Shown here piece after piece: positions 8,620 to 62,870 of a DNA stretch of 64,000 nucleotides (position 1 is its first letter; each line of letters opens with the position of its first letter). Below the pieces are notes generated by a model that ran no database searches, was not told the DNA's origin, and saw nothing but the letters and a program-made list of their open reading frames with translations. A program made the position numbers and the translations under genes. Location: positions 370,510-434,509 of IMG/VR virus record IMGVR_UViG_3300032236_001850. One strand, given 5' to 3'.

Positions 8620-10026
8620 ATGATTATTGATATAGAGAATAAGGGAAGCTACTTAAATGTATCGCACTTCGGCCCTGAAGGAGAACTTGCATTCCTACAC
8701 GTCCCAATACCTGAGGAGGAAAGATTTAATTGGGAAAAATGCAATCCTGGAGATCCTAAGAGGGATAAGGAATGGACAAACTGGAAGGGAGAACCAGTAA
8801 AGAAGGTAAAGACCGAAAGATATGACAAATATCGTATGGCTCAAATCCTAATGGAAGCTCCGGATGAATTAACAAAGCCCTTATGGGAATATCAGGAACC
8901 TAAGAAATACTTCGTCGATATAGAGGTTGAGATAACCGAAGATAAAGCTGCATCACTGGATACTGAGAATGCTAGAAATAGGGTTCTTTCAATAGGTATT
9001 GGAACCGATAAAAGAAAAATATTAATTCTTGGACTCGACCCATTAACACCGGAACAGCAGGGAAGTATTTTTAATAAACTAAACTCATATTTCGAAAAAA
9101 CCGGAGACGAGTGGAGTTTCAAATATAAACAATTTGAAACCGAGTATGATATGATGTACACCTTTTTCCGTGAGCTTGGTCCTAAAATGTCAACCATTAC
9201 TGGATGGAACTGGCTTGGGTATGACTGGCCATATTTGGTTAATAGAGCTAAAAGACTTGGAATAGATCCAAAAATAATATCTCCTGGAAAAACCCTTATT
9301 GGCAAGGGACAATTACCACAGCACCTATTGATGTTTGACTACTTGGAGATTTATAAAAAATGGGACAGAGTTATTAAAATCAAGGAAAGTAATAGACTTG
9401 ATTATGTTGCAGAAAAAGCTGTTGGTTTCAAGAAGATAACTTATGATGGAACACTGAGAGATTTATACCAATCAAATTTTGAAGATTTTATCTACTATAA
9501 TGCTGTCGATTGTGCTCTAGTTCACTATATAGATCAGAAGCTTAAAACCATGCAAACTTTCTTTAAGATTGCGATGATATCTGGTGTTGAAATAAATAGA
9601 TGTCTTTCTCCTGTTTGGTCCACTGAGGTTCTTATGATGAAGAAATTTCTGGAAAGAAAACAGGTTCTTACCGCTGAGAAAAAAGAGGAGGTTCATGTTA
9701 AATTTGCTGGTGGATACGTTAAAGATCCTATAAAGGGATTGCATGGTTGGGTAGCATGTTACGATTTTGCTTCGCTATATCCTAATACAATGGTACAGTG
9801 GGGAATTTCACCTGAATCTTATAAAGGAAAAAATCTATTGAATCCTAAGGAAGCTTGGATAAAATGTGCTTCCGGTGCATACTTTGGAAATGATGACGAT
9901 AACCCAATATTAAAAATAATAATCAAGGATTTATATTCCAGAAGAAGAAAAACTAAGGATAAAATGCTTGAATTAGAGCTAGAAATTGATGCTTTGAAAA
10001 AAGAATTGGCCAAGGCGAAAAATTAA
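8620..10026 (+). CDS. Family-B DNA polymerase, N-terminal half (3'-5' exonuclease plus motif A)
   Basis: ExoI DIEV, ExoII GWNWLGYD, ExoIII YNAVD, motif A YDFASLYP; stops in the fingers helix. Confidence 0.9.
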   Translation: MIIDIENKGSYLNVSHFGPEGELAFLHVPIPEEERFNWEKCNPGDPKRDKEWTNWKGEPVKKVKTERYDKYRMAQILMEAPDELTKPLWEYQEPKKYFVDIEVEITEDKAASLDTENARNRVLSIGIGTDKRKILILGLDPLTPEQQGSIFNKLNSYFEKTGDEWSFKYKQFETEYDMMYTFFRELGPKMSTITGWNWLGYDWPYLVNRAKRLGIDPKIISPGKTLIGKGQLPQHLLMFDYLEIYKKWDRVIKIKESNRLDYVAEKAVGFKKITYDGTLRDLYQSNFEDFIYYNAVDCALVHYIDQKLKTMQTFFKIAMISGVEINRCLSPVWSTEVLMMKKFLERKQVLTAEKKEEVHVKFAGGYVKDPIKGLHGWVACYDFASLYPNTMVQWGISPESYKGKNLLNPKEAWIKCASGAYFGNDDDNPILKIIIKDLYSRRRKTKDKMLELELEIDALKKELAKAKN

Positions 10027-10028
10027 CG

Positions 10029-10094
10029 TATTAGTCTCGGTAGATCTGAATCTGGGTTGATATATAAAATCCAAGAGCGATCTAGAGTCTAGTA
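10029..10094 (+). other. Long imperfect hairpin with GATATATAA in the loop
   Basis: TATTAG/CTAGTA, CTC/GAG, TAGATC/GATCTA, TCT/AGA, GGGTT/AATCC arms. Confidence 0.6.
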
Positions 10095-10127
10095 ATAAGA
10101 TTATGAAATTAACAAAAATTAAATAAA

Positions 10128-10595
10128 ATGGCTAACATTGACAACAGTTGCTCAGAGTTAAATATCGAGGATCTTTATTCAAAAAGTAGTGACACTCTTG
10201 GGGACATACTGAATTTACAAGCAGACACGCAAAGGAATGTTTATAATTATAACTTCGATGAAATGAATCTTCGAGAAGTTATGGAATTTTGGCATATGAA
10301 CACTCATGCAATGATAGATGAGATTCATGAAGCAACAGATGCTCTTGGCGGAATTAAGGATGGCAACGGTAATGCGATTTGGAAAAAATGGAAACAAGCT
10401 TATGATACCTACGGGTCTAAAAAATTCTCAGACCTATCACCAAGCGATCAACTTGAATGTAAATTCGAGGTTATAGATATGCTTCATTTTTTCATGAATT
10501 ATGCAATATCTATAGGTATGACACCATCTGAAATGTACAATATGTACATGAGTAAAAACCTGGAAAACAGGAGAAGACAACAAAATAATTATTAA
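10128..10595 (+). CDS. Dimeric all-alpha dUTPase/dCTPase (T4 gp56/MazG-like)
   Basis: [27 protein letters not shown]. Confidence 0.85.
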
Positions 10596-45767: not shown

Positions 45768-46013
45768 ATGAATAATTCTGATAACAAAATACCAGAACTT
45801 AATCTAAAGATGGAAACTAGGACTATGGAAGCAAAGACTAGAGTACTACGTACTCCTTATGTTTTAGTAACAACTCCTTATATGATACTTTCTGATAAAG
45901 ATGGAACTAGAAGAGTGTGGACAAGAAACAAAAGAAGCATAATTCTGTATTATCTTTATAAAATAACAAGGATTGAATGGTTTATAAAAAAATATAATGA
46001 ACAGGCTAGATAA
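45768..46013 (+). CDS. Small protein carrying a gp23 major-capsid-like segment
   Basis: IPELNLKMETRTMEAKTRVLRTPY resembles the gp23 ExxFxIxKxxxEAKSRxLKAxY segment. Confidence 0.5.
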   Translation: MNNSDNKIPELNLKMETRTMEAKTRVLRTPYVLVTTPYMILSDKDGTRRVWTRNKRSIILYYLYKITRIEWFIKKYNEQAR

Positions 46014-47247
46014 ACAATACACAGATCTACTTGCAACCATATTGGAGCATGGGGTAGATAAAAAAGATAGAACAGGAACCGGCACAAGGTCAATATTTGG
46101 TTATACCATCCGACATAATATGAAAGATGGGTTTCCACTTCTTACAACCAAGAAAATGTCATTCAAAACAATCGTAACAGAACTTATCTGGTTCTTACGA
46201 GGTGATACAAACATTAAGTTTTTGGTTGATAATAATTGTCATATTTGGGATGGTGATGCTTATAAAGCGTTTGGAAAATGGAAACAAGAAACAGACGCTA
46301 AAATAAGAAAAGAAAACCCAACAATAGATTTTCAGCCTTTGGAATATGAATCACAAGAAGAATTTATCAACAAAATAAAAACAGATGATGAGTTTGCTAA
46401 GAAGTGGGGTGAGTTAGGTCCAATTTATGGAGCTCAATGGAGAAGTTGGGGAGAACATTTACCTCAGGATCCTCAATATAAATTAGCAGCTAGAACATAT
46501 ATCGATCAGATCCATAACTCTATAGATTTGCTTATAATTGACCCTGACTCAAGAAGAAACAGAGTTTCAGCATGGAATGTTGGTGAACTGAACATGATGG
46601 TTCTTCCGCCATGTCATACTGATTTTCAATTTTATTCCGTTGAGATGACAAACGAAGAAAGGTGTCAATATTTTGCAAGTAGTCTGAATAAGAATATTTC
46701 ATTTACAAAAAATCTTACCAATAAAAAACTTGATGAACTTGGTTGTCCCTCACGTAGATTGTCACTAATGTGGAATCAGCGTTCGGTAGATACTTTCTTG
46801 GGTTTACCCTTTAATATTGCTTCCTATGGATTATTATTAGAAATAATTGGGAGATGTGTTAATATGATTCCTGACCAGTTGATTGGTAATTTGGGTGATG
46901 TTCATTTGTATTCAAATCACATTCAGCAAGCTAAAGAACAGATTGGAAGAAAATATACACACGAGGAAAGAACCTCCATGTTGATCTCCGCTATGGGTGA
47001 AGAAAAATATAATAAAGCACTTGGTGAACTGATGCCATTTGGTGGAGGTATGAGTGAATATTATGACTCTTATAACATACCTCACAGAACTAGAGAACCC
47101 TTTGATTTACCTAAATTGATTCTAAATCCAATATTTTTAGCGGATCTGGAACATAAAGGATTTGATGCAGCTATAAATGGCGAGATTAATTTCAAAATTG
47201 AAAATTATCAAGCTCATCCACATATACCAGCACCTCTAAGCAACTAA
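45997..47247 (+). CDS. thyA: Thymidylate synthase with insertions
   Basis: DRTGTGT, LPPCH, QRSVD..GLPFN, DVHLYSNH. Confidence 0.95.
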   Translation: MNRLDKQYTDLLATILEHGVDKKDRTGTGTRSIFGYTIRHNMKDGFPLLTTKKMSFKTIVTELIWFLRGDTNIKFLVDNNCHIWDGDAYKAFGKWKQETDAKIRKENPTIDFQPLEYESQEEFINKIKTDDEFAKKWGELGPIYGAQWRSWGEHLPQDPQYKLAARTYIDQIHNSIDLLIIDPDSRRNRVSAWNVGELNMMVLPPCHTDFQFYSVEMTNEERCQYFASSLNKNISFTKNLTNKKLDELGCPSRRLSLMWNQRSVDTFLGLPFNIASYGLLLEIIGRCVNMIPDQLIGNLGDVHLYSNHIQQAKEQIGRKYTHEERTSMLISAMGEEKYNKALGELMPFGGGMSEYYDSYNIPHRTREPFDLPKLILNPIFLADLEHKGFDAAINGEINFKIENYQAHPHIPAPLSN

Positions 47248-51629: not shown

Positions 51630-52104
51630 ATAAAATAATAAATAATGGGAACATACACAGGAATTCATTTGGGTGTCTTCATAAAGGTGCCAATAAGGGA
51701 AATAGAAATCACAGAAACCAAATTTGTAGATCCCGAGACAGGTAAAACAAAGAAAACCAAATTCTGTCCGGATACTGGTAAAGAATTTAAAACAGAAACT
51801 TTTACTAGAAAAGAGAAAGATTACCCATCTGCTTATATAGAGAAGGAAGGTTATAGAGAGGATGAATTTTGGCAACCTGCATATCATGGAGGTGGAGAGG
51901 AGTTTCAGGTTTTTTTATTGAATTCCAAAAATCCTAAGTATGTTATAGATGCTGATGTTGATGATCTTGATTGTATAAACTTCATCGGTAGAAACAATAA
52001 CTATGAATCGATAGTTGAGGAATTCACTAAGGAATACGAAAAATATATTAACTATTATAAGGAGCAGTATGGAGAAATCCAAATCTGCTACGGTCTAACA
52101 ATTT

Positions 52105-52572
52105 ATGCACACTAAAATGAAAAAAATTAGAAATGCTGTTTTCGAAACTAACAGCTCAAGTTCACACAGTATCTCAGTTTCGGATGTAAATTCTGACGAA
52201 TTGATGGATAACGTCATGGTCATGGATGAAAATGATAATGTCGTAGTGGAACCCGGAGAATTTGGATGGGAGGAAGAAGTTTATAATGATTCTGTGACGA
52301 AGGCAAGTTATATGCTTACTTATATTAAGAATTACTGTGGTGACAGGGAATCAGAATTCGAGGAGATGCTTAAGGATGTAATCAAGGAGCAAACAGGATG
52401 CAACGATGTTATCTTTAATGAATCTGGTGACAAATACTATAATTATGGTTATATCGATCATCAGTCATCATCAAACGATCAGCTTCACTGGGTTTTTGAG
52501 AATAAAGAAACACTTAGACAGTTTATTTTCAACAGAGAATCAATACTAGAGACAGACAATGACAACCATTAA
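52105..52572 (+). CDS. FETNSSSxHS-motif protein
   Basis: IRNAVFETNSSSSHS at N-terminus, YIDHQS, ends DNDN. Confidence 0.65.
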   Translation: MHTKMKKIRNAVFETNSSSSHSISVSDVNSDELMDNVMVMDENDNVVVEPGEFGWEEEVYNDSVTKASYMLTYIKNYCGDRESEFEEMLKDVIKEQTGCNDVIFNESGDKYYNYGYIDHQSSSNDQLHWVFENKETLRQFIFNRESILETDNDNH

Positions 52573-53437
52573 TACATACCAAAATGGTAACACAACCGTT
52601 ACCCTAATGAGCGATGGTACAAAAATAAGGGAGTATGAAGGTACTCCCGTTGTTTATCATCCAGAAAGCATAGATGTGAAGATCACGGACTATTGTGACA
52701 TGGGATGTGCTTATTGTCACGAGAGCTCCACCAAAGCTGGGGTTCATGGTGATCTTGGCGTGCTTCTTGAAACCCTGAAGGATCTTCCTGCCGGTGTGGA
52801 GTTAGCTATAGGTGGGGGTAATCCTCTAGCTCATCCGGATCTTATCCCTTTCCTTCAAACCCTGAAGGCAAGAGGTATCGTTGCAAATCTAACCATAAAT
52901 CAAGGACATCTTAAAACATTCCAAGATCTTATTGTTTATTTAATCAAGGACAATCTAGTAAAGGGTGTTGGTATTTCTATAACCAGCAACAACTTCACTT
53001 ATGTTAAACCTCTATTGGAAATAAGTGATAATATAGTTTACCATATTATTGCTGGTGTAAACAAGGTGGACGACATGGAAAAACTAATCTCACTTGGGAA
53101 ATGTAAAGTGCTTGTACTTGGATATAAGCATTTTGGATTTGGCGTTAACTTCCATAGCGAAGCGGTGGAGAAAGAAATTAGAAGATGGTATATTCATTTA
53201 CCAAAATATCTTGGTAAGTGCGTGGTTTCTTTTGATAATCTAGCAATCGAACAACTTAATGTTAAGAGACTATTCACTAATCGAGGATGGGAGAAATTCT
53301 ACATGGGTGATGACTTCTGTTTCACTATGTATATTGACGCTGTTAAGCAAAATTATGCTCCGACCAGTAGAAGTAGTGACCGAAGATCTTTTGCTCAGTA
53401 TACGCTGCTAGAATACTTTAATACGGAAAGAAAATAG
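52559..53437 (+). CDS. Radical SAM protein
   Basis: CDMGCAYCHE (CxxxCxxC), GGGNP. Confidence 0.9.
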   Translation: MTTINTYQNGNTTVTLMSDGTKIREYEGTPVVYHPESIDVKITDYCDMGCAYCHESSTKAGVHGDLGVLLETLKDLPAGVELAIGGGNPLAHPDLIPFLQTLKARGIVANLTINQGHLKTFQDLIVYLIKDNLVKGVGISITSNNFTYVKPLLEISDNIVYHIIAGVNKVDDMEKLISLGKCKVLVLGYKHFGFGVNFHSEAVEKEIRRWYIHLPKYLGKCVVSFDNLAIEQLNVKRLFTNRGWEKFYMGDDFCFTMYIDAVKQNYAPTSRSSDRRSFAQYTLLEYFNTERK

Positions 53438-53439
53438 CT

Positions 53440-55272
53440 ATGGCAGTAATAGGAATACATTACGATGGCGGCAATTACTACGATGATGATGACCAATTAG
53501 TTGAATTTCCAATTGGGTATCAAAATGTTTATCTTCATACAGGCAAGGGTGAATTTATATTCGACTCTGGAGATTTTGTGAAGGATTGGTTTAACGCTAA
53601 GAAGAAATATGTTGAGGTTATGGACGAGGAACCATGGCTTTCTGGATCTTCAAGTTGCGATCATTTCATAACAGATGGAGCAAAATTCGACAGCGCGTAT
53701 TTACATACAGACGAGGAGGGAAATCCTGAACTTAGATACATTGATTATTCAGATGAAAACTATCTATATAATCAGAGAGATGTATACGAGAAGGGATGGG
53801 AGATGTTTGTGAATCCTGGAGAAACACCGACGTGGAAGGAATTAAGTGAATATTGTAAAAAAGAATAATATGAAATTACAAGATGTAATAAATGGACTTA
53901 ATGATGGATCGATAACAATAATGGGAACTCATTATACAAATCCACTTGTTGATAAATTGGAGTATGAGATTAATCATCTCCAGGATATGATTAAGGAGTA
54001 TACACAAAAAATAAAGGATAAAGAACCAGAAATTAGAGAGAATCAACATCAGGGAATGCTGGATTGGTACATCAGGGATCTTAATATGGATCTGGAATTT
54101 GGTGATGATCTAATGAGAGCCGAAAATTATTGTTTTGATTGTGACGAACATCTTCGTGTTGTTCTTATTGACGAGAAAACAATTGCATATTCAGATCAAC
54201 ATCATTTCTATTCAATAGTATCCGAAAAGAGAGGTGAGGGCAGGAAATTTTTGGTTTCTGACGTGAAGTCTTGTTCCTGTGGTGATCTTAGAGAAAAATC
54301 CAAAATGGTTTCCAGAATAGAGGTTCCAACCGGTGAATTAGTTTTTTCTAACTTCTTCAGAACCAAAGAATTATACTGTGATCCTGACAACGAATGGGGT
54401 AAACCTGGCATAAATTCTCTTTTGGGTAGAGATGCACTTATGCAGAATTTAGCAACCCGAAATGTTGGGTATGGTCAGATGGGAAATATGAGTGCTGGTA
54501 TTTGTAGTAATGGGAGGGATGAGATCTACGTTTGTGACACTTATCCAGTAGCTCTTGATAATGCTAGATACTATGAGGATCATCCAGAAAGGCTCGAGGA
54601 GATGTCGGAGAAGGAGAAAAGGATGCTTTATAAGGATGTTGAGGACTCTAAAAATCTGGAGAAAAAATTTGAAACCGAAGGATTTACAAATCATGGTAAT
54701 GTTTCAATGAGTGTTTGGAGATGGCAATGTGCGGATAAATCTGTACTTGATGCTCATGGAGAAGATCTGGAAGCACTCAAGAAGGATTATGTTGATGTTA
54801 TTACAGTGAAAGTTGAACCTGGAACTTGGGAAATAGAACACTACTACGACTTCCCTTGCAATGGTGATGTCATATATTCTAAATTAACAAAAGTAAAATA
54901 ATGGAATATTCTAAGTTTGAGGAGATAATCAAAAGAATGAAAAGCCACGGCGAAAGAAACAGCAAGGCTTATGAACTTAATATAGACCTTATTAATTTCT
55001 GTGACGATCTGGAAACCATAGTCAGCCTACTTATTCGCGAAGTCTATGGTGAAGAGGGTGCTGGTTGGTTTGATTGGTTCTGCTTTGATGCGGATTTCGG
55101 TGAGAAGGACTGGAGCAAATCTGCAACATACGAAAACGTTAATGGGATTATGAGAAAGATTAAGGAGGAGGGAGATCCAAAATGGGGAGCTAGCGACGAA
55201 AACGGCAATCCCATTTGTTACTCTGTTAGATCAACGTGGGAATATTTAGAAGCTAACTATAATAAGAAATAA
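53440..55272 (+). CDS. Three hypothetical proteins (53440, 53846, 54901)
   Basis: ORF track. Confidence 0.5.
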
Positions 55273-55273
55273 A

Positions 55274-56092
55274 ATGCCAGAATTACCAGAAGTAGCAAGA
55301 ACCGTACATTCTTTAAGTCAAATAATAAAAGGTGGTACTTTAGAGGAGGTCATTATCCATTCCGGCCGATATGCAAAGCACGGTGATCCTGCTGGATTGG
55401 AGAATTTTAGAAATGATCTCCCAGCAAAAATAGACGATATTAATTTCCAGGGCAAACTCATAATATTTGAATTTACTGGGAGTAGCGGAAAGAAGTGGTG
55501 GGCTTGGAACACATTAGGTATGTCCGGTGGCTGGAGAAATGATTGGTCTAAACATGGACATGTAGAATTTAGATGTAAGTTTCTATCTGTTTTCTTCACA
55601 GATATACGAAATTTTGGTACACTCAAATTTACTGATAGCCTGGATGAAACGAATAAAAAGAAAAGAACAATTGGACCGAATCATTTAAGTGACGAGATTT
55701 CTAATGAACTTTTTAAACAAAGGCTGATGAAATATCCAAATAAAACACTGCCAGAGGTTCTAATGAATCAGTCGCTGATAGGCGGAATCGGAAACTATAT
55801 AAAGGCTGAGGTTCTTTATAGAGCTGGTGTATCACCACATAGACTTGTTGGCTCTCTTAACGATGAGGAATTTTCAGCTCTGAATCGAGAAACAAGGGAC
55901 GTTGTCAGGAGTTCTTATGCCAGAAGAGGTGCAACAATTAGCACATATCGAGACATTGAAGGGAATGGTGGTGAGTTTGTTTTTTACTTCAAAGTTTATG
56001 GTAGACCGATATGTGAAAATGGATACCAAGTAGTTAGAGAAATAACTAAGGATAAAAGAATGACCCACTGGGTACCACAAATACAAAGATAA
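55274..56092 (+). CDS. mutM: Fpg/Nei DNA glycosylase with zinc-less finger
   Basis: MPELPEV, LGMSG, DIRNFG, GIGNYI; lacks the four Zn-finger Cys. Confidence 0.85.
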   Translation: MPELPEVARTVHSLSQIIKGGTLEEVIIHSGRYAKHGDPAGLENFRNDLPAKIDDINFQGKLIIFEFTGSSGKKWWAWNTLGMSGGWRNDWSKHGHVEFRCKFLSVFFTDIRNFGTLKFTDSLDETNKKKRTIGPNHLSDEISNELFKQRLMKYPNKTLPEVLMNQSLIGGIGNYIKAEVLYRAGVSPHRLVGSLNDEEFSALNRETRDVVRSSYARRGATISTYRDIEGNGGEFVFYFKVYGRPICENGYQVVREITKDKRMTHWVPQIQR

Positions 56093-56278
56093 TGCCATAC
56101 CCAAAGTACAAAAAAGGAGAGAAGGTAGAAATCATTGGTAACACCATTGGTTTTATAAAAGATGGAAAAATTGGACCTTTTTATGGAACAATTAGAGAAA
56201 TTGACGGTAAAGATATTTATATAAAACCTAGATATCAAAGATGGACAGGCCACTGGTATATGTGGGAGATTAAAAAGA

Positions 56279-57301
56279 TTGAAGATGTCAAAGCGAGCAA
56301 GATCTGAGGAAATAAGACAAACACTTAAGAAAATTAAAACCTATAGTATGAATGAGTATCACCCAAATCACCCGAGATCCATATCTGAATTATTGGAGGA
56401 GGAAGAAGAAACTAAAAGAAAAAATGATTTCACACAGTGGAACATAGTCGGAGATGGTAGTTATATAGCTGCACCTAAAACACAGAAGATTTTATTTCCA
56501 GGTCTTTATGAACCACACTATAACAATAGAGCTAGTGAATGGGGATTGATGAAACAGGATGTTAATACTGATGAGCTTTATGAGCTACCAACAAAGGAGA
56601 TTGAGGTTATCCTAACAGATCTTAAAAGCTTCTGGGATAAGAAGGATGAATATGCAAAGTATAAACTTATGCACAAAAGGGGTATACTTCTTTACGGAGA
56701 TCCCGGATGTGGTAAATCTGGTATACTTCAGCTTTGTATGAAACACATCATCAAGGATCTTGGTGGAATAGTGATTAATGTTAAAGATGAAGATACTGTT
56801 AGAGGTTACTTGGAAGTTATTGGTAAACTAAGACAAATCGAACCAGATAGACCAATCATAGTTATCATAGAGGATATTGACGGTATAGCAGCGGAAGGAA
56901 GCTATGTTACATCTCAACTTCTTAACATGTTGGATGGTATTAAGCAAATTGAGAATGTTGTTTATATAGCAACAACAAATTACCCTGAGAAGTTAGCGGA
57001 AAGGATCACAAACCGTCCGTCTCGCTTCGATAGAAGGTATTATATAGCTCCTCCGTCTCCAGAAGTAAGAATGTCTTATTTGAAAAATAAACTCGGTAGT
57101 GAAGCCGAAATCGACTTTAATATGTGGGTTAAAGATACTGAGGGCATGTCAATCTCTCACCTTAAGGAGCTATTCATATCTGTTTTCCTATTGGATAATA
57201 AATATGAGGAAGCTCTTAAGCATCTGAAGGAACTTAAGAAAACACCGAGAGGGAAGGGACAAAAAGGAGTTGGGTTCAGTACATCTAAAGACAACGATTA
57301 G
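56279..57301 (+). CDS. AAA+ ATPase
   Basis: GDPGCGKS, IEDID, LLNMLDG, TTN, RPSRFDR. Confidence 0.9.
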   Translation: MKMSKRARSEEIRQTLKKIKTYSMNEYHPNHPRSISELLEEEEETKRKNDFTQWNIVGDGSYIAAPKTQKILFPGLYEPHYNNRASEWGLMKQDVNTDELYELPTKEIEVILTDLKSFWDKKDEYAKYKLMHKRGILLYGDPGCGKSGILQLCMKHIIKDLGGIVINVKDEDTVRGYLEVIGKLRQIEPDRPIIVIIEDIDGIAAEGSYVTSQLLNMLDGIKQIENVVYIATTNYPEKLAERITNRPSRFDRRYYIAPPSPEVRMSYLKNKLGSEAEIDFNMWVKDTEGMSISHLKELFISVFLLDNKYEEALKHLKELKKTPRGKGQKGVGFSTSKDND

Positions 57302-57644
57302 TCATGAAAAAATACGATAACTCAGTTCTTATTAAATTAAGAAGAACTTACTCTGAAAACGAAGCAGTTATGTGGGCTTTGAATAAGCTTAAAGAGATGT
57401 ATGTTGAGAGAGGGCAGAATAATGCTTATATCCATGAGCTTGAAGACAAAGTTAGAAAATTAGAAAAAGAACTTCTCAAAAGAGAAAAGCAAGTTCCATT
57501 AACAGATGAGCAAAGAAGCGAATATGATCAATATATGAGCATGAAATCAGAGATGGAAAGCAAAACTCAGATGAAGAAAGAAATAGAAAGATTAACAAAG
57601 GACAACAAGGATCTTGTTGGACGTATAGCTAGAATGCAGCAATA

Positions 57645-58211
57645 ATGAAGGTGGTATTTTTGGACAACGATGGCGTGATTTGTCTTTCCAATAATTGGGG
57701 AGGTAGAACAAGAAAATATGAGGAGTATAGAAAATTGCATCCTGATGCAGTATCATACAAAGAGGTTGACGTTTTTCATAGATTTGATAATTTCGACAGA
57801 AAGGCTATTAGAGTTCTTAATTCCATCTTGGAAGAAACCGGTGCCGAAATAGTTGTAAGTTCAGATTGGAAGAAGCATGCAACATTGGAGGAGCTTGGTG
57901 ATTATTACGAATCTCAGGGAATCATTAAAAGACCTATAGCTGTTACTAGAAGTTTCATTGGATGTGATAGACCTGCGGATTTCAATTGGAACAGATCTCT
58001 TCATTATGAACAGGAAAGATCTTTCGAGATTAATCAGTACGTAAAGGATAATCCACAGATAACCCACTGGGTAGCGGTGGATGATCTCGATATGTCAATG
58101 CGAAAGGACTGGGGAGTTGAAAATTTTGTCCTCACCCCTAAGATGAGCGAGGGTATAAAACAATCAGGTATAAAAGAAAAAATTATGACTTTTTTGTCCG
58201 ATAATATATAG
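57645..58211 (+). CDS. HAD-family phosphatase (Swiss-Army-knife RNA-repair type)
   Basis: FLDNDGV, VSSDW, AVDD. Confidence 0.8.
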   Translation: MKVVFLDNDGVICLSNNWGGRTRKYEEYRKLHPDAVSYKEVDVFHRFDNFDRKAIRVLNSILEETGAEIVVSSDWKKHATLEELGDYYESQGIIKRPIAVTRSFIGCDRPADFNWNRSLHYEQERSFEINQYVKDNPQITHWVAVDDLDMSMRKDWGVENFVLTPKMSEGIKQSGIKEKIMTFLSDNI

Positions 58212-58214
58212 AGG

Positions 58215-58727
58215 ATGGAAAAATGTATATTCTTTTTGCTTTTACCAATATTGATATTTAGCCAGGATTGTAATCCTGCAAAAAGGAACGTGATAATTGG
58301 AGATTCTTGCACCCCTCTAATTGCTAAGCACACAGAAAATGCTAAGCTTTCAATCTGGAAATCTGGTATTGGAGTTAATTGGTTGATTCATTCACTTGAT
58401 GTTAGAAAGGCTGATGAGAAGGTTTCTAATGTAATAATAAATATTGGAACTAACGATGCTTTCAATCCACTTGCTAATATACGCAGACTTTTCTATAGTC
58501 TAAGAAGGGCTTATCCGTGTGCCAATTTTATTGCAGTCCAAGGATCTTGGGGATGGGGTAACAATAGAAGAATAAAGGAAAGCAAGGTTAAAGCTTTTTA
58601 TGAAATCTTCAAATCGTATGGTGCTTATATTATAGATCCACCGATTGGATTTGTTAGAAATCCACATTTGGATTTATCAGTCTATACTCTAATCGGAAAA
58701 GAGATAGATAAAAAATTAAAAAATTAA
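58215..58727 (+). CDS. Secreted SGNH/GDSL-like hydrolase
   Basis: IGDS, G, IGTND, NPH; signal peptide IFS|Q. Confidence 0.65.
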   Translation: MEKCIFFLLLPILIFSQDCNPAKRNVIIGDSCTPLIAKHTENAKLSIWKSGIGVNWLIHSLDVRKADEKVSNVIINIGTNDAFNPLANIRRLFYSLRRAYPCANFIAVQGSWGWGNNRRIKESKVKAFYEIFKSYGAYIIDPPIGFVRNPHLDLSVYTLIGKEIDKKLKN

Positions 58728-60107: not shown

Positions 60108-62870
60108 TTATTTTAAATATCCAGTTCTTATTAGATAAAAGTTTGTGCTACCCCCGGTTAATATGCCATCTATGTTCATTACTTGTAAGCCTGGATATGT
60201 AGATTTTAGATTGGCAGTTCCCGAATTTATTTGTGACCATTCAACTGGTGTGAATATTCTATATGTTGGTGTTGAATTTGTCCATCCCGTAGATCCTCCG
60301 CTCTTAAAGTAAATTAAGAATATATCTGTTACTGATAAATTGTTATCGTTATTAACATCCATTCTGTAGAAATCCTTAGAATTGAATATTCTATTTAGAA
60401 CTTTTGTATTGAAGCTATATGCATCATTTATGGTTGGTGCAGAGATCGGAATGTTTTCTAATGCAATTCTGAAATCATTCGAAACTGATGACAATGTGGT
60501 TGTTATAAGATACTTCCCCGTTGAATCTGTCGGATATATTCCGTATAAGGTGTAAATTATCTGGCTTTTTACTCTGTAATATAATTTAACTGGAATTGCA
60601 TTTATGCCAGTATTTTCTGAATCGTAAACGTATCCATTATATGTGAATGGTGTGCTTACTAGGCCAGATTGGGAATAAGTGGTACATGAACCATTTGTTA
60701 CAACAGCTCTAAATAAAACACCATCTGTCTGATTAGTAAAAGTATATGAAGTTGTTGTGTTTGAAATATCCGTCCAGGTTACACCACTATCAGTGGATCT
60801 TTGCCATTTGGATACTGTTCCCGTATTTCCACTTAGATTTATAGTTCCTGATGTACCTGCATAAGAAGAAACAGAGCCTCCCGTTGGTGGTGCAAGTACA
60901 GAAACACTTACAACATTTGGATAAGTTACTACAGTACAACCTGTTGCTTGTATTTCAACTCTATAGTAATAAGTACCTGGTGCTGTAATTACTCCATTAG
61001 TCCAGTTTGATGTTGTTCCAGTAAGTGCAAAGTTATATAAAGTACCTGTGTTATTATTACCGCTTGTATCAGTTAAAGAAGTAATAGTATTTGTGCCGTT
61101 TGGATTTCCTTGATTAAATCTATAATATTCTACAAGTGAACTTGATGTACCTATCTCGGAATTCATATTTGATTGAATATCAGATTGTGAACGTACAACA
61201 TTCCAAATTCTTAACTCGTCTATTGTTCCATTAAAATATTGAATACCTGTTTGTATTGATCCTATACGTATTGAGGGTGGTGCACTTCTAAGACCTGTGG
61301 CACCGGTTGTACTGGCTTCTAATACACCATTAATATAAAGTTTCATGGCACCAGTTGAACCATCCCAAGTAGCCGCAACGTGTACCCAATTTCCAGTATT
61401 AATACTTGTAGTTGATTGAATGGTAACATCAGGAAGTCCAACACCAAATGCTAACTTACTATTAAGTAATGATGTACCAAAATCTGTTGTAGCACCACCA
61501 ACTTCAGCATCAACTATACCATTACCCTGATACCATTGTGATCCTGAAGGTGATGCTTGTGTTGTTTTAACCCAATACTCTATTGTAAAGGCATTAAGAC
61601 TAGGTTTAGGTATATTTACATAATCATTAGAACCATCTGTATTTAAAGCACCGCCATAAATAGTTTCACTTAAACTTGTGGTTGTATTTGCTATATCAGT
61701 CCAATTTACATTATCAGTTGATCTTTGCCATTTATTTATATTTCCGCTTTGTCCTGAAAGTGTTAATTGTACATTACCACCCGTACAAATTGTTCCTGTA
61801 GTTGTTGCCAGGGTTCCACCAATTGGAACTGTTCCTGTTTTTGTAACGACGACAGTACCATAAGCACCAACATTAGGTTCTTCTGCTCTAATAGTATTTG
61901 AAGCTAATGTTCCTGCGTTAGATGTGAAAACAACAGTTCCTATACCCGAAGCATTTGTTGTTAAGGTATAAGCTGATAAAGTTCCACCACCAACATCAGA
62001 AGACATAACTAAGTTAGTAGGCATTCCAACACCATTAACATCTTTTGTTGTAACGGTTATAGTTGATGTTAGAGCAGTACAAGAAATTGAATTAGATGAT
62101 GTTAAAACAATAGAAGCTACACCTTGTGAATAACTTCCGGTACTTGATAAAGGTGTTGAATTAGGTGCCACTAAAGCACTATAAACATCATGTTCTTCTG
62201 TTGCACCACCTGTTGCGGCAGTATATCCAAAATAGAAATCAGAAATTCCTACAAAATTTGTAGCTAGGTTAATTGAAACGGATAACGTAGCTGCAGTAGG
62301 ACGAGTAGTTGTATTTGATATACGTACTTCCAATATGTGAGTTACTCCGTTATACTCTATCCAATTATATTTCATTGCACCATCTGCTAAGTTAACTGGA
62401 GAAGCAACCACGTTTGTACTACCGGAGTGTAATACCCCATTTATGTCGAGTGCTATATGATTATTACCACCAACTTCACCATTGTCATAAGTATCATACT
62501 CAACTGCAATAGACTTTCCCGGCATTCCTTGATACCCTAGACCACCACCAGAACTACCTGCATTATTACTAGCTTGTTGAATACAGAATGTCATACCATC
62601 CGCTCTTGAACCAGGTATCATTTTTGATGTGAAATATGTGGAGAATGACATATCATCAGGAAGAGAAATTTTCTGTTTCCAGAAAGCTGATCCTGCTTGA
62701 TTACCAGCATTAGGGGTTAATCTTAAATATGAACTACTAATAATGGAAGCATTACCGTTAATTTGCCATCCACCAGCCGAACTAAAGTTTGGTGAATAGA
62801 TAGGAAGTGGAGTTTGTGCATTAATTAGTGTGCTTGTTATTATGCACAGGAATAATAATATTTTTCTCAT
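60108..62870 (-). CDS. Secreted multidomain adhesin: L-type lectin, LamG/ConA, Ig-like repeats, dockerin-like EF hand
   Basis: ADGMTF/AVEYDT lectin motifs; WVHVAAT, GTIDELRIWN; KWQRSTD repeat twice; DVNNDNNLSVTD. Confidence 0.75.
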   Translation of the reverse strand: MRKILLFLCIITSTLINAQTPLPIYSPNFSSAGGWQINGNASIISSSYLRLTPNAGNQAGSAFWKQKISLPDDMSFSTYFTSKMIPGSRADGMTFCIQQASNNAGSSGGGLGYQGMPGKSIAVEYDTYDNGEVGGNNHIALDINGVLHSGSTNVVASPVNLADGAMKYNWIEYNGVTHILEVRISNTTTRPTAATLSVSINLATNFVGISDFYFGYTAATGGATEEHDVYSALVAPNSTPLSSTGSYSQGVASIVLTSSNSISCTALTSTITVTTKDVNGVGMPTNLVMSSDVGGGTLSAYTLTTNASGIGTVVFTSNAGTLASNTIRAEEPNVGAYGTVVVTKTGTVPIGGTLATTTGTICTGGNVQLTLSGQSGNINKWQRSTDNVNWTDIANTTTSLSETIYGGALNTDGSNDYVNIPKPSLNAFTIEYWVKTTQASPSGSQWYQGNGIVDAEVGGATTDFGTSLLNSKLAFGVGLPDVTIQSTTSINTGNWVHVAATWDGSTGAMKLYINGVLEASTTGATGLRSAPPSIRIGSIQTGIQYFNGTIDELRIWNVVRSQSDIQSNMNSEIGTSSSLVEYYRFNQGNPNGTNTITSLTDTSGNNNTGTLYNFALTGTTSNWTNGVITAPGTYYYRVEIQATGCTVVTYPNVVSVSVLAPPTGGSVSSYAGTSGTINLSGNTGTVSKWQRSTDSGVTWTDISNTTTSYTFTNQTDGVLFRAVVTNGSCTTYSQSGLVSTPFTYNGYVYDSENTGINAIPVKLYYRVKSQIIYTLYGIYPTDSTGKYLITTTLSSVSNDFRIALENIPISAPTINDAYSFNTKVLNRIFNSKDFYRMDVNNDNNLSVTDIFLIYFKSGGSTGWTNSTPTYRIFTPVEWSQINSGTANLKSTYPGLQVMNIDGILTGGSTNFYLIRTGYLK

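What the first reader, a model, noticed from the sequence alone, without database searches (positions are those of the whole stretch)
52105..53437. Radical SAM enzyme coupled to an FETNSSSxHS-motif protein
Seen: overlapping genes under a host-type early promoter. The upstream protein starts with RxxxFETNSSSSHS and ends in DNDN. The rSAM has no SPASM Cys cluster. Inference: an enzyme-substrate pair in which the Ser-rich motif is modified or self-processed to make a cofactor, or a two-component nucleotide-modifying or anti-defence enzyme. Function unknown to me.
Basis: partly seen in the sequence, partly recalled or inferred. Interest (0 to 1): 0.6.

Follow-up and report, generated by a model that had tools for sequence, protein, structure and literature searches.

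The report
Phage radical SAM enzyme with tagged client proteins
A jumbo-phage radical SAM enzyme is paired, in many phages and some cellular assemblies, with proteins that share one invariant Ser-rich N-terminal tag, which is predicted to thread into the enzyme's active site; neither this pairing nor its chemistry turned up in the papers and family libraries I searched.

Summary
The two genes are real. Gene A is at 52105/52117-52572. Gene B, a radical SAM (rSAM) enzyme, is at 52559-53437 and overlaps A by 14 nt. The claimed host-type promoter is not supported.

The pair is a self-contained module:
- 81 of 84 loci found through A carry a B homologue.
- 79 of 80 loci found through B carry at least one tagged ORF on the same strand.
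- No third gene family is conserved around the pair.
- At least 120, and probably several hundred, proteins are A-B fusions, including Salmonella phage Arash gp146.

The motif, TNSSSxH about 8-9 residues from the start, is a portable N-terminal tag. In Lak phages and gut metagenome contigs, 2-9 proteins with unrelated bodies carry it next to a single rSAM gene.

B has only the three cluster cysteines and no SPASM or twitch domain. Its model is nonetheless closest to the peptide-modifying maturases SkfB and SuiB. A's body has no Pfam family and no detectable structural relative.

A complex prediction scored 0.92 against a best control of 0.01. It places A residues 2-28 in B's barrel, with A 6-9 strand-pairing onto B's N-terminal sheet.

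Best reading: B is a maturase that abstracts a hydrogen atom from the tag of its client proteins. The chemistry and the biological role are unknown. Main rival: an obligate holoenzyme in which the tag is a docking or active-site element.

The parts
52105..52572 (+). Gene A: the tagged client protein. 155 aa from ATG 52105, or more likely 151 aa from ATG 52117. Its body is a family without a Pfam model (phrog_28997). Conserved elements are GEFGW, K66..Y69, QTG, GYIDHQS, and the C-terminal end TDNDNH.
52117..52170 (+). N-terminal tag MKKIRNAVFETNSSSSHS (residues 5-22). It has a leader-like K.IR..VF strand and an invariant core, T15 N16 S17 S18 S19 x H21 (52147-52167). The residue before the core, E14, is replaced by A in the fused family. 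The position between the last Ser and the His is variable across the family.
   Evidence: Invariant columns. The shared module is the only region that aligns between type-1 and type-2 proteins. pLDDT is below 50 in the monomer model. All of residues 2-28 lie in the interface with B.
52559..53437 (+). Gene B: radical SAM enzyme, 292 aa, phrog_16999. It is a partial TIM barrel with a single [4Fe-4S]/SAM site and no auxiliary-cluster domain.
52565..52633 (+). B's N-terminal three-stranded sheet (residues 3-25; conserved Y.NGN and DGTK.R). It is the predicted docking site for the tag's K.IR strand.
   Evidence: Secondary structure. Alignments to SkfB and SuiB span this N-terminal part. The lowest-error contacts are B 21-25 with A 6-9.
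52694..52717 (+). Cluster-binding motif C46-DMG-C50-AY-C53, followed by H54-E55. These are the only invariant cysteines. The spacing from the first to the second Cys varies among homologues (about 3, 5, 8 and 12-15 residues).
52559..52572 (+). The 14-nt overlap of A's end with B's start, suggesting translational coupling.
   Evidence: B starts within 100 nt of a tagged gene's end in 64 of 76 related loci.

Best explanation
B is a radical SAM maturase and A is its client protein.

Proposed mechanism:
1. A's N-terminal tag is flexible in free A.
2. Its K.IR..VF segment docks as an extra beta-strand on B's N-terminal sheet, much as a RiPP (ribosomally made, post-translationally modified peptide) leader docks on its recognition element.
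3. The invariant core TNSSSxH is fed into B's barrel beside the [4Fe-4S]/SAM site.
4. The 5'-deoxyadenosyl radical abstracts a hydrogen atom from one of the invariant residues, most likely a Ser. The variable x position is not the target.
5. This installs a post-translational modification.
6. The modified tag then serves the client's own function, probably by folding back onto the body's invariant polar cluster (D118 H119 S121, D151 D153).

In other phages the same rSAM serves several clients with unrelated bodies, or is fused to an A-type client.

Shown: gene linkage, fusions, tag portability, B's fold class, and absence of auxiliary clusters.
Predicted: the binding mode.
Inferred: that a modification occurs, which residue is hit, the chemistry, and the biological role.
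For: Linkage:
- 81 of 84 A-seeded loci carry B, usually directly downstream on the same strand.
- 79 of 80 B-seeded loci carry at least one tag, and all 120 tags are on B's strand. The one exception is a locus cut off inside B.
- A census of 81 neighbourhoods found no other family in more than 10 loci.

Fusions:
- Arash gp146 is an A-B fusion.
- 726 proteins match it at E <= 1e-5; the 120 listed are 435-570 aa and cover at least 92% of it.
- Both the tag and the rSAM motifs are invariant in 20 aligned fusions.

One enzyme, many clients:
- There are 2-9 tagged ORFs per locus, with at least six body types.
- Lak-B7 has one B and four tagged genes.
- hhalign aligns only the first 38 columns between body types 1 and 2 (probability 99%).
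- The tag sits at a fixed offset from the start.

Fold: B is closest to SkfB (Z 20.4, 261 aa, rmsd 3.2) and SuiB (Z 18.6; Foldseek 6e-8). Next come EpeE, PqqE, ChlB, CteB and anSME, with viperin and BlsE interleaved.

Complex: ipSAE 0.92 (runs 0.87, 0.92, 0.92) against a best control of 0.01.
- This mark was reached by 58 of 80 solved complexes and 2 of 110 mismatched pairs. Those counts hold only roughly here, because my own alignments were used and ligands rode along.
- The runs share at least 90% of contacts, and the partner's pLDDT is at least 79.
- A 2-28 touches B's invariant barrel-lining residues (54-55, 81-86, 110-112, 135-138, 160-162, 183-190, 221-228, 258, 269-270).

The tag is disordered in the monomer model.
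Against: - No modification has been observed, and the complex is a prediction only.
- Widespread fusion and 1:1 overlapping genes are more typical of subunits of one enzyme than of a catalyst and its substrate.
- Most structurally characterised peptide- or protein-modifying rSAMs that do two-electron oxidations use SPASM or twitch clusters, which B lacks. B also has no conserved Cys to act as a hydrogen donor, as used by epimerases.
- Eight contiguous near-invariant residues are far more conserved than typical RiPP cores.
- The clients' functions are unknown, so it cannot be said what a modification would be for.
Confidence: 0.55

Rival explanations
1. Obligate holoenzyme. A and B are two subunits, or two domains in the fusions, of one rSAM enzyme that acts on a third-party substrate such as a metabolite, nucleotide, nucleic acid or host protein. 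The tag is a docking or active-site element that completes or gates B's barrel, replacing the missing C-terminal SPASM or twitch lid. The different tagged bodies are exchangeable specificity subunits.
For: - The fused architecture is common.
- The genes overlap and are 1:1 in jumbo phages (a single copy of each in the 434-kb genome).
- The interface is very large (about 203 contacts), as in permanent complexes.
- The tag's extreme invariance fits a catalytic element.
- B lacks any substrate-binding C-terminal domain.
Against: - The modelled tag touches barrel strands around the site where rSAM substrates bind (B 81, 108, 110, 136, 160, 183-190, 221-228). This leaves no obvious room for another substrate.
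- No candidate third component is conserved nearby.
- B's nearest folds are peptide maturases.
Confidence: 0.27
2. Protein-radical activation. B acts like a glycyl-radical-enzyme activase and leaves a catalytically used radical on the tag of A-type enzymes.
For: - B is a small rSAM without auxiliary clusters that acts on a conserved loop of a folded protein, like PflA or NrdG.
- PflA is among the fold matches (Z 12.4).
- One source names a fused homologue 'organic radical activating enzyme'.
Against: - The tag core has no glycine.
- NrdG and PflA-type family scores are far below their cut-offs (NrdG2 19.7 bits against 131).
- SkfB and SuiB match much better than PflA.
- Many hosts are aerobes or oxygenic phototrophs (Microcystis), where stable backbone radicals are unlikely.
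Confidence: 0.06
3. A two-component nucleotide- or DNA-modifying enzyme, the first reader's alternative, with A binding the nucleotide.
For: - The window neighbourhood holds a thymidylate-synthase homologue and an Fpg/Nei glycosylase.
- Weak N-terminal similarity to viperin, MoaA and QueE models.
Against: - Those neighbours are not conserved with the pair.
- All family scores are far below their cut-offs and cover only the generic cluster/SAM region.
- A's body has no nucleotide-binding family or fold match.
Confidence: 0.07

Closest known systems
RiPP radical SAM maturases with an N-terminal peptide-recognition domain (SkfB, SuiB, CteB)
   Same: - They are the best structural matches, and the alignments span the N-terminal domain: SkfB Z 20.4, SuiB Z 18.6.
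- The substrate's N-terminal segment is predicted to dock as a strand on the enzyme's N-terminal sheet, with the following residues entering the barrel.
- One enzyme serves several precursor genes in an array.
   Different: - B has no SPASM or twitch domain and no auxiliary-cluster cysteines.
- Its N-terminal element is only a three-stranded sheet, not a full winged-helix recognition element.
- The clients are folded proteins of 90-320 aa with conserved bodies, not short peptides.
- The target sits at the N-terminus and is almost invariant.
- The distribution is mainly viral.
Anaerobic sulfatase-maturating enzymes (AtsB, anSME) and Ser/Cys-type sulfatases
   Same: - An rSAM modifies a Ser or Cys in a short conserved motif near the N-terminus of folded client enzymes, making a catalytic residue (established knowledge).
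- One maturase serves many clients.
- anSME is among the fold matches (Z 14.9).
   Different: - The motif is TNSSSxH, not (C/S)-x-(P/A)-x-R.
- There are no auxiliary clusters.
- The clients are not sulfatase-fold proteins and have no Pfam hit.
Glycyl-radical-enzyme activases (PflA, NrdG) with GrcA/YfiD-type small clients
   Same: - A small single-cluster rSAM acts on a conserved loop of a folded protein that must flip into the activase (established knowledge).
- The client here is small, about 150 aa.
   Different: - The tag has no glycine, and it is N-terminal rather than C-terminal.
- The fold match is weaker (Z 12.4).
- Family scores are below their cut-offs.
Capsid-targeting sequences of T4 internal proteins (an analogy recalled from general knowledge, not tested here)
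   Same: Arrays of otherwise unrelated phage proteins share only a short conserved N-terminal sequence that directs them to one common machine.
   Different: - Here the common partner is an rSAM enzyme, and the tag is predicted to sit in its active site.
- There is no evidence for packaging or cleavage.

Membership tests
Radical SAM superfamily (PF04055) | A three-Cys motif (canonically CX3CX2C) binding the [4Fe-4S] cluster | tested here: met
   C46, C50 and C53 are invariant in 39 homologues. Pfam scores 38.3 bits against a cut-off of 29.5.
Radical SAM superfamily (PF04055) | Partial (beta/alpha)6 TIM barrel with a Gly-rich SAM-binding strand | tested here: met
   The model has pLDDT 94.5. 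Many solved rSAM structures match with Z above 10. The ELAIGGGNP strand is conserved.
SPASM/twitch radical SAM maturases (anSME, SkfB, SuiB, PqqE) | C-terminal domain with extra Cys ligands for auxiliary Fe-S clusters | tested here: not met
   No Cys beyond 46, 50 and 53 is conserved, and the protein ends right after the barrel. Only PF04055 is hit.
SPASM/twitch radical SAM maturases (anSME, SkfB, SuiB, PqqE) | N-terminal peptide-recognition (RRE-like) element that binds the substrate's leader | tested here: inconclusive
   Alignments to SkfB and SuiB span residues 3-25, which form a three-stranded sheet. That sheet is predicted to pair with A 6-9. No winged-helix part is present.
RiPP precursor peptides | A short gene product with a leader and a core, released by proteolysis | tested here: not met
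   Tagged products are 90-476 aa with conserved bodies. Cleavage cannot be tested with these tools.
Glycyl-radical enzyme / activase pairs | A conserved Gly in the client's radical motif, and an activase that reaches the family score | tested here: not met
   The tag core has no Gly. NrdG2 scores 19.7 bits against a cut-off of 131.
Viperin / pVip | A full-length match to the viperin models, including the C-terminal nucleotide-binding part | tested here: not met
   NF038283 scores 22.5 bits against a cut-off of 180, on residues 37-145 only. PADLOC pVip scores 1e-7, also N-terminal only.
QueE / MoaA | The equivalog score is reached | tested here: not met
   QueE scores 17.2 bits against 300. MoaA scores about 20-22 bits against cut-offs of 231-325.
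phrog_16999 ('Fe-S oxidoreductase') and phrog_28997 (unknown function) | A full-length profile match | tested here: met
   B scores 4.1e-76 over 34-288. A scores 4.5e-13 over 7-154. These are bookkeeping families with no tested function.

The most novel reading that the evidence does not exclude
A phage-wide protein-tagging system. A dedicated, auxiliary-cluster-free rSAM installs a so-far-undescribed radical modification on an invariant N-terminal TNSSSxH tag. The tag is carried by many unrelated phage proteins, including a large family with no detectable structural relative. The modification creates a protein-derived cofactor or reactive group that arms a varied set of host-takeover or counter-defence effectors.
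Probability: 0.3. Interest if true: 0.9.

Novelty: new variant of a known kind. Interest (0 to 1): 0.78.

Why it matters
Radical SAM enzymes that mature proteins, such as sulfatase maturases, glycyl-radical activases and RiPP maturases, have each revealed new cofactors or new chemistry. This case stands out for four reasons.

- It is a very large family that is mostly viral. The A-type client alone has 4,963 clusters at 50% identity.
- It has no Pfam family, no detectable structural relative for the client body, and no literature that I could find.
- It has a clear, testable handle: a 20-residue tag, a 290-residue enzyme, and natural fusions.
- It occurs in cultured phages (Microcystis phage Ma-LMM01, Salmonella phage Arash), and homologues lie in isolate bacterial genome assemblies.

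If the tag is modified, this defines a new post-translational modification and a new way for phages to arm sets of accessory proteins. It would also explain a gene that has been annotated only as 'Fe-S oxidoreductase' or 'methyltransferase'.

Tried and rejected
- Pfam, NCBIfam and PADLOC on A found nothing. On B they gave only generic N-terminal rSAM matches far below the family cut-offs.
- A's fold: Foldseek against the PDB gave a best E of 0.58. VIA-align against 48,161 chains gave a best Z of 2.8. A PDB profile search found nothing with E below 0.3.
- The Atlas fold search gave a lead: a 261-aa cluster annotated Tad2-like (PF11195) matching A at TM 0.66. Pfam scans of 56 long A-family members (6, 10, all 50 of alignment A4, with overlap between the last two) found no PF11195 or any other domain. 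The lead is unconfirmed.
- Bodies of the other tagged protein types have no Pfam or PHROG function.
- Literature: searches for the motif string, 'radical SAM' with Ma-LMM01, jumbo phage with radical SAM, and phage-encoded or viral radical SAM found nothing relevant. The Arash paper does not discuss gp146.
- A near-identity DNA search of the phage collection found no match.
- A conserved third gene was looked for, for example the aaRS-like genes seen near the pair in Ma-LMM01 and L007. It was rejected by the census.
- The promoter claim is not supported by the scan.
- I noted that the fused family has A in place of the tag's E, and C-Y-Q in place of B's C-H-E. Unfused loci with C-Y-E or C-Y-A still have E in the tag, so I do not claim covariation.

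Full report
**1. What is in the window**

- ORF A runs 52105-52572 (+) and encodes 155 aa. It reads MHTKMKKIRNAVFETNSSSSHS... and ends ...ETDNDNH.
- ORF B runs 52559-53437 (+) and encodes 292 aa, with C46-DMG-C50-AY-C53.
- The two genes overlap by 14 nt.
- B passes Pfam's Radical_SAM threshold (38.3 bits against 29.5) and matches phrog_16999, 'Fe-S oxidoreductase', at 4e-76. A has no Pfam or NCBIfam family and matches only phrog_28997, of unknown function.
- B has six cysteines, but only the three cluster ligands are conserved. There is no SPASM or twitch hit.

Two corrections are needed.
- Relatives begin MK.IR, and the tag sits 8-9 residues from the start in 222 of 245 ORFs. A therefore more likely starts at the second ATG, 52117.
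- The 'host-type early promoter' is not supported. The sigma-70 scan finds no + strand site upstream of A, and finds fewer sites overall (7) than in shuffles (9.5). A is the second gene of a packed co-directional run from 51645 to 58727.

The window is the last 64 kb of a single 434,509-bp contig with 35.2% G+C, evidently a jumbo phage. That genome has exactly one tagged ORF and one B gene.

**2. The pair is a conserved, autonomous module**

- A has 1,395 relatives in the word-indexed search, none with a Pfam domain. The exhaustive profile search finds 4,963 clusters at 50% identity.
- In 84 loci fetched through A, 81 encode a B homologue, nearly always directly downstream on the same strand. 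B starts within 100 nt of a tagged gene's end in 64 of 76 loci.
- Starting instead from B, 79 of 80 IMG/VR loci carry at least one tagged ORF. All 120 tags are on B's strand. The single exception is a locus truncated inside B.
- Reversed translations of the same DNA give zero tag matches.
- A census of all ORFs in 81 neighbourhoods found no other family in more than 10 loci. Nothing else is needed genetically.
- Among isolated phages, the pair occurs in the Microcystis Ma-LMM01/MaMV group (gp130, then gp129, then gp128) and in Lak megaphages.

**3. Fusions**

- Salmonella phage Arash gp146, annotated 'methyltransferase', is a single 476-aa protein. It consists of the tag, an A-type body and then B.
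- This is not an isolated case. 726 proteins match it at E <= 1e-5. The 120 listed are 435-570 aa and cover at least 92% of its length. They include records from Methylobacterium and from Thermoanaerobaculia and Promethearchaeota MAGs.
- In 20 aligned fusions, the tag (R..G.ATNSSS.HS), the A-body motifs (GW, K..Y, DH.S, GGNDN) and the rSAM motifs are all invariant.

**4. The motif is a portable N-terminal tag**

- Lak-B7 has one B gene followed by four tagged genes.
- Gut and rumen contigs have 2-9 tagged genes next to one B. One example is L142, with six tagged ORFs between 5088 and 8715 and then the rSAM at 9699-10538.
- These products all begin MK.IR..(V/T)FETNSSSxH(S/A) but have at least six different kinds of body.
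- A profile-profile comparison of the A-type alignment with the commonest second type, which ends ...VAFG.YGYDG, aligns only the first 38 columns (probability 99%, E 6.5e-18).
- None of the bodies has a Pfam or PHROG function.
- The position between the last Ser and the His is variable (T, S, V, Q, C, M, A). T-N-S-S-S and H are essentially invariant.

**5. Structures**

- A's model is confident apart from the tag: pLDDT 83.5 and pTM 0.80, but residues 1-16 are below 50. It has no detectable relative among solved structures. Foldseek's best E is 0.58, VIA-align's best Z is 2.8 over 48,161 chains, and the profile search of PDB sequences is empty.
- B's model has pLDDT 94.5. It is most similar to the RiPP maturases SkfB (Z 20.4, rmsd 3.2, 261 residues) and SuiB (Z 18.6; Foldseek 6e-8), and both alignments span their N-terminal domains. 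EpeE, PqqE, viperin, BlsE, ChlB, CteB and anSME follow. PflA is at Z 12.4 and QueE at about 8-10.
- B therefore belongs structurally with peptide- and protein-modifying rSAMs, but lacks their auxiliary-cluster domain.
- The spacing from the first to the second cluster Cys varies among homologues, at about 3, 5, 8 and 12-15 residues.

**6. Predicted complex**

- The job used B, a 4Fe-4S cluster and SAM, with A as the partner. It scored ipSAE 0.92 (runs 0.87, 0.92, 0.92) against a best control of 0.01.
- The tool's mark was reached by 58 of 80 solved complexes and 2 of 110 mismatched pairs. These counts hold only roughly here, because my own alignments were used and ligands rode along.
- The runs agree in at least 90% of contacts, and the partner's pLDDT is at least 79. 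This supports binding but does not show it.
- The interface on A is residues 2-28, plus 31-36, 40, 44, 95-99, 143 and 145.
- A 6-9 pairs with B 21-25, the third strand of B's N-terminal sheet.
- A V12 and F13 touch B 81, 108, 110, 136 and 160.
- The rest of B's interface is made of its invariant barrel-lining residues (54-55 next to the cluster loop, 81-86 on the SAM strand, 110-112, 135-138, 160-162, 183-190, 221-228, 258, 269-270).
- A's other invariant residues (D118, H119, S121, D151, D153) are not in the interface.

**7. Interpretation**

The most economical reading is that B is a maturase and the tag is its substrate. A leader-like strand docks on B's N-terminal sheet, and the invariant core enters the barrel at the SAM site. 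A hydrogen atom is then abstracted from one of the invariant residues. The modified tag later works together with the client's body.

The following favour this reading:
- several different clients per enzyme;
- the fixed N-terminal position of the tag;
- its disorder in free A;
- B's fold class;
- the modelled occupation of the substrate site.

The following count against it and support the rival, an obligate holoenzyme in which the tag is a docking or active-site element and the bodies are specificity subunits:
- widespread fusion and 1:1 overlapping genes;
- the tag's extreme invariance;
- the lack of an auxiliary cluster or of a conserved Cys hydrogen donor, which limits the familiar chemistries.

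I put the maturase model at about 0.55 and the holoenzyme at about 0.27. Glycyl-radical-type activation (no Gly in the tag) and nucleotide modification (no conserved nucleotide genes, family scores far below cut-off) are minor. The broader statement, that A's tag engages B's active site as a dedicated pair, I hold at about 0.85.

The chemistry is not determined. Options that need no auxiliary cluster include Ser dehydration or elimination, oxidation with electron return to the main cluster, and C-alpha to C-beta fragmentation. These are conjectures.

**8. Comparison with the known, and novelty**

- The system works like an rSAM protein maturase: anSME with sulfatases, activases with glycyl-radical enzymes, or RRE-dependent RiPP maturases.
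- It fails the defining features of each of these. It has no SPASM or twitch domain, no Gly motif, no short cleavable precursor, and its family scores are far below the cut-offs.
- I found no paper on it.
- I file it as a new variant of a known kind. A real chance remains that the modification and the tagging logic are new in kind.

**9. Limits**

- No experiment was possible.
- The complex is a prediction made with my own alignments.
- The cellular 'genome' loci are mostly MAG contigs, which may be phages or prophages. I did not test this.
- The Tad2-like lead from the Atlas fold search could not be confirmed.
- Timing of expression is unknown.

Noticed in passing
L044:6846-8950: In this viral contig the B gene is interrupted right at the cluster motif. 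The N-terminal piece ends C-P-F and then continues C-F-H-P-D-S-E-V..., which looks like the start of an intein. The second piece ends ...N-C-L-V-H-N and is followed by C-H-E-K-S-T. The third cluster cysteine would therefore be the +1 residue of an intein. The two pieces are in different frames, so the element may be degenerate.
   Followed up: partly
L090:3629-5626 and L143:6491-7349: These are further interrupted B genes. L090 has about 1.1 kb inserted between residues ~94 and ~85-270, which could be an intein or an intron. L143 has two overlapping pieces in different frames, suggesting a frameshift.
   Followed up: no
window 45997-47247 (+): A 416-aa thymidylate-synthase homologue (PF00303, 2e-83). 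Its match spans residues 6-322 for only 228 profile positions, so it carries insertions and a C-terminal extension. It could be a dUMP/dCMP hydroxymethylase-type enzyme.
   Followed up: no
window 55274-56092 (+): A phage-encoded Fpg/Nei-type DNA glycosylase (Fapy_DNA_glyco and H2TH domains; phrog_21295), three genes downstream of the rSAM.
   Followed up: no
window 60108-62870 (-): A 920-aa protein with a legume-lectin domain and a Laminin_G_3/pentaxin-like domain. It is possibly a receptor-binding or decoration protein.
   Followed up: no
window 57645-58211 (+) and 56279-57301 (+): A HAD domain of the 'Swiss Army Knife RNA repair' type (PF18143, 1e-20), next to an AAA ATPase.
   Followed up: no
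A-family proteins P0123, P0127, P0135, P0153, P0163, P0245 and others: About a third of the best 150 A-family representatives are 240-356 aa. They consist of an A domain ending TGNDN plus varied C-terminal extensions without any Pfam match. An Atlas cluster of 261-aa proteins annotated Tad2-like (PF11195) has a part with A's fold (TM 0.66).
   Followed up: partly
L001 (Ma-LMM01 gp131) and L007:1992-2777: Truncated aminoacyl-tRNA-synthetase-like genes ('histidyl tRNA synthetase' of 266 aa; a tRNA-synt_1c protein of 261 aa) lie a few genes upstream of the pair in two unrelated phages. They are not conserved in the wider census.
   Followed up: partly
alignment A5 (fused family) versus A1 and A2: In the fused family the residue before T-N-S-S-S is Ala instead of Glu, and B's post-cluster residues are Y-Q instead of H-E. 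Unfused loci with C-Y-E or C-Y-A keep Glu, so this is not clean covariation.
   Followed up: partly
L123 (Eubacterium plexicaudatum ASF492), L117 (Lachnospiraceae MD308), P0287 (Methylobacterium ajmalii): The module occurs in genome assemblies whose record titles name isolate bacteria. These are presumably prophages, which I did not check. If so, they offer tractable native systems.
   Followed up: no
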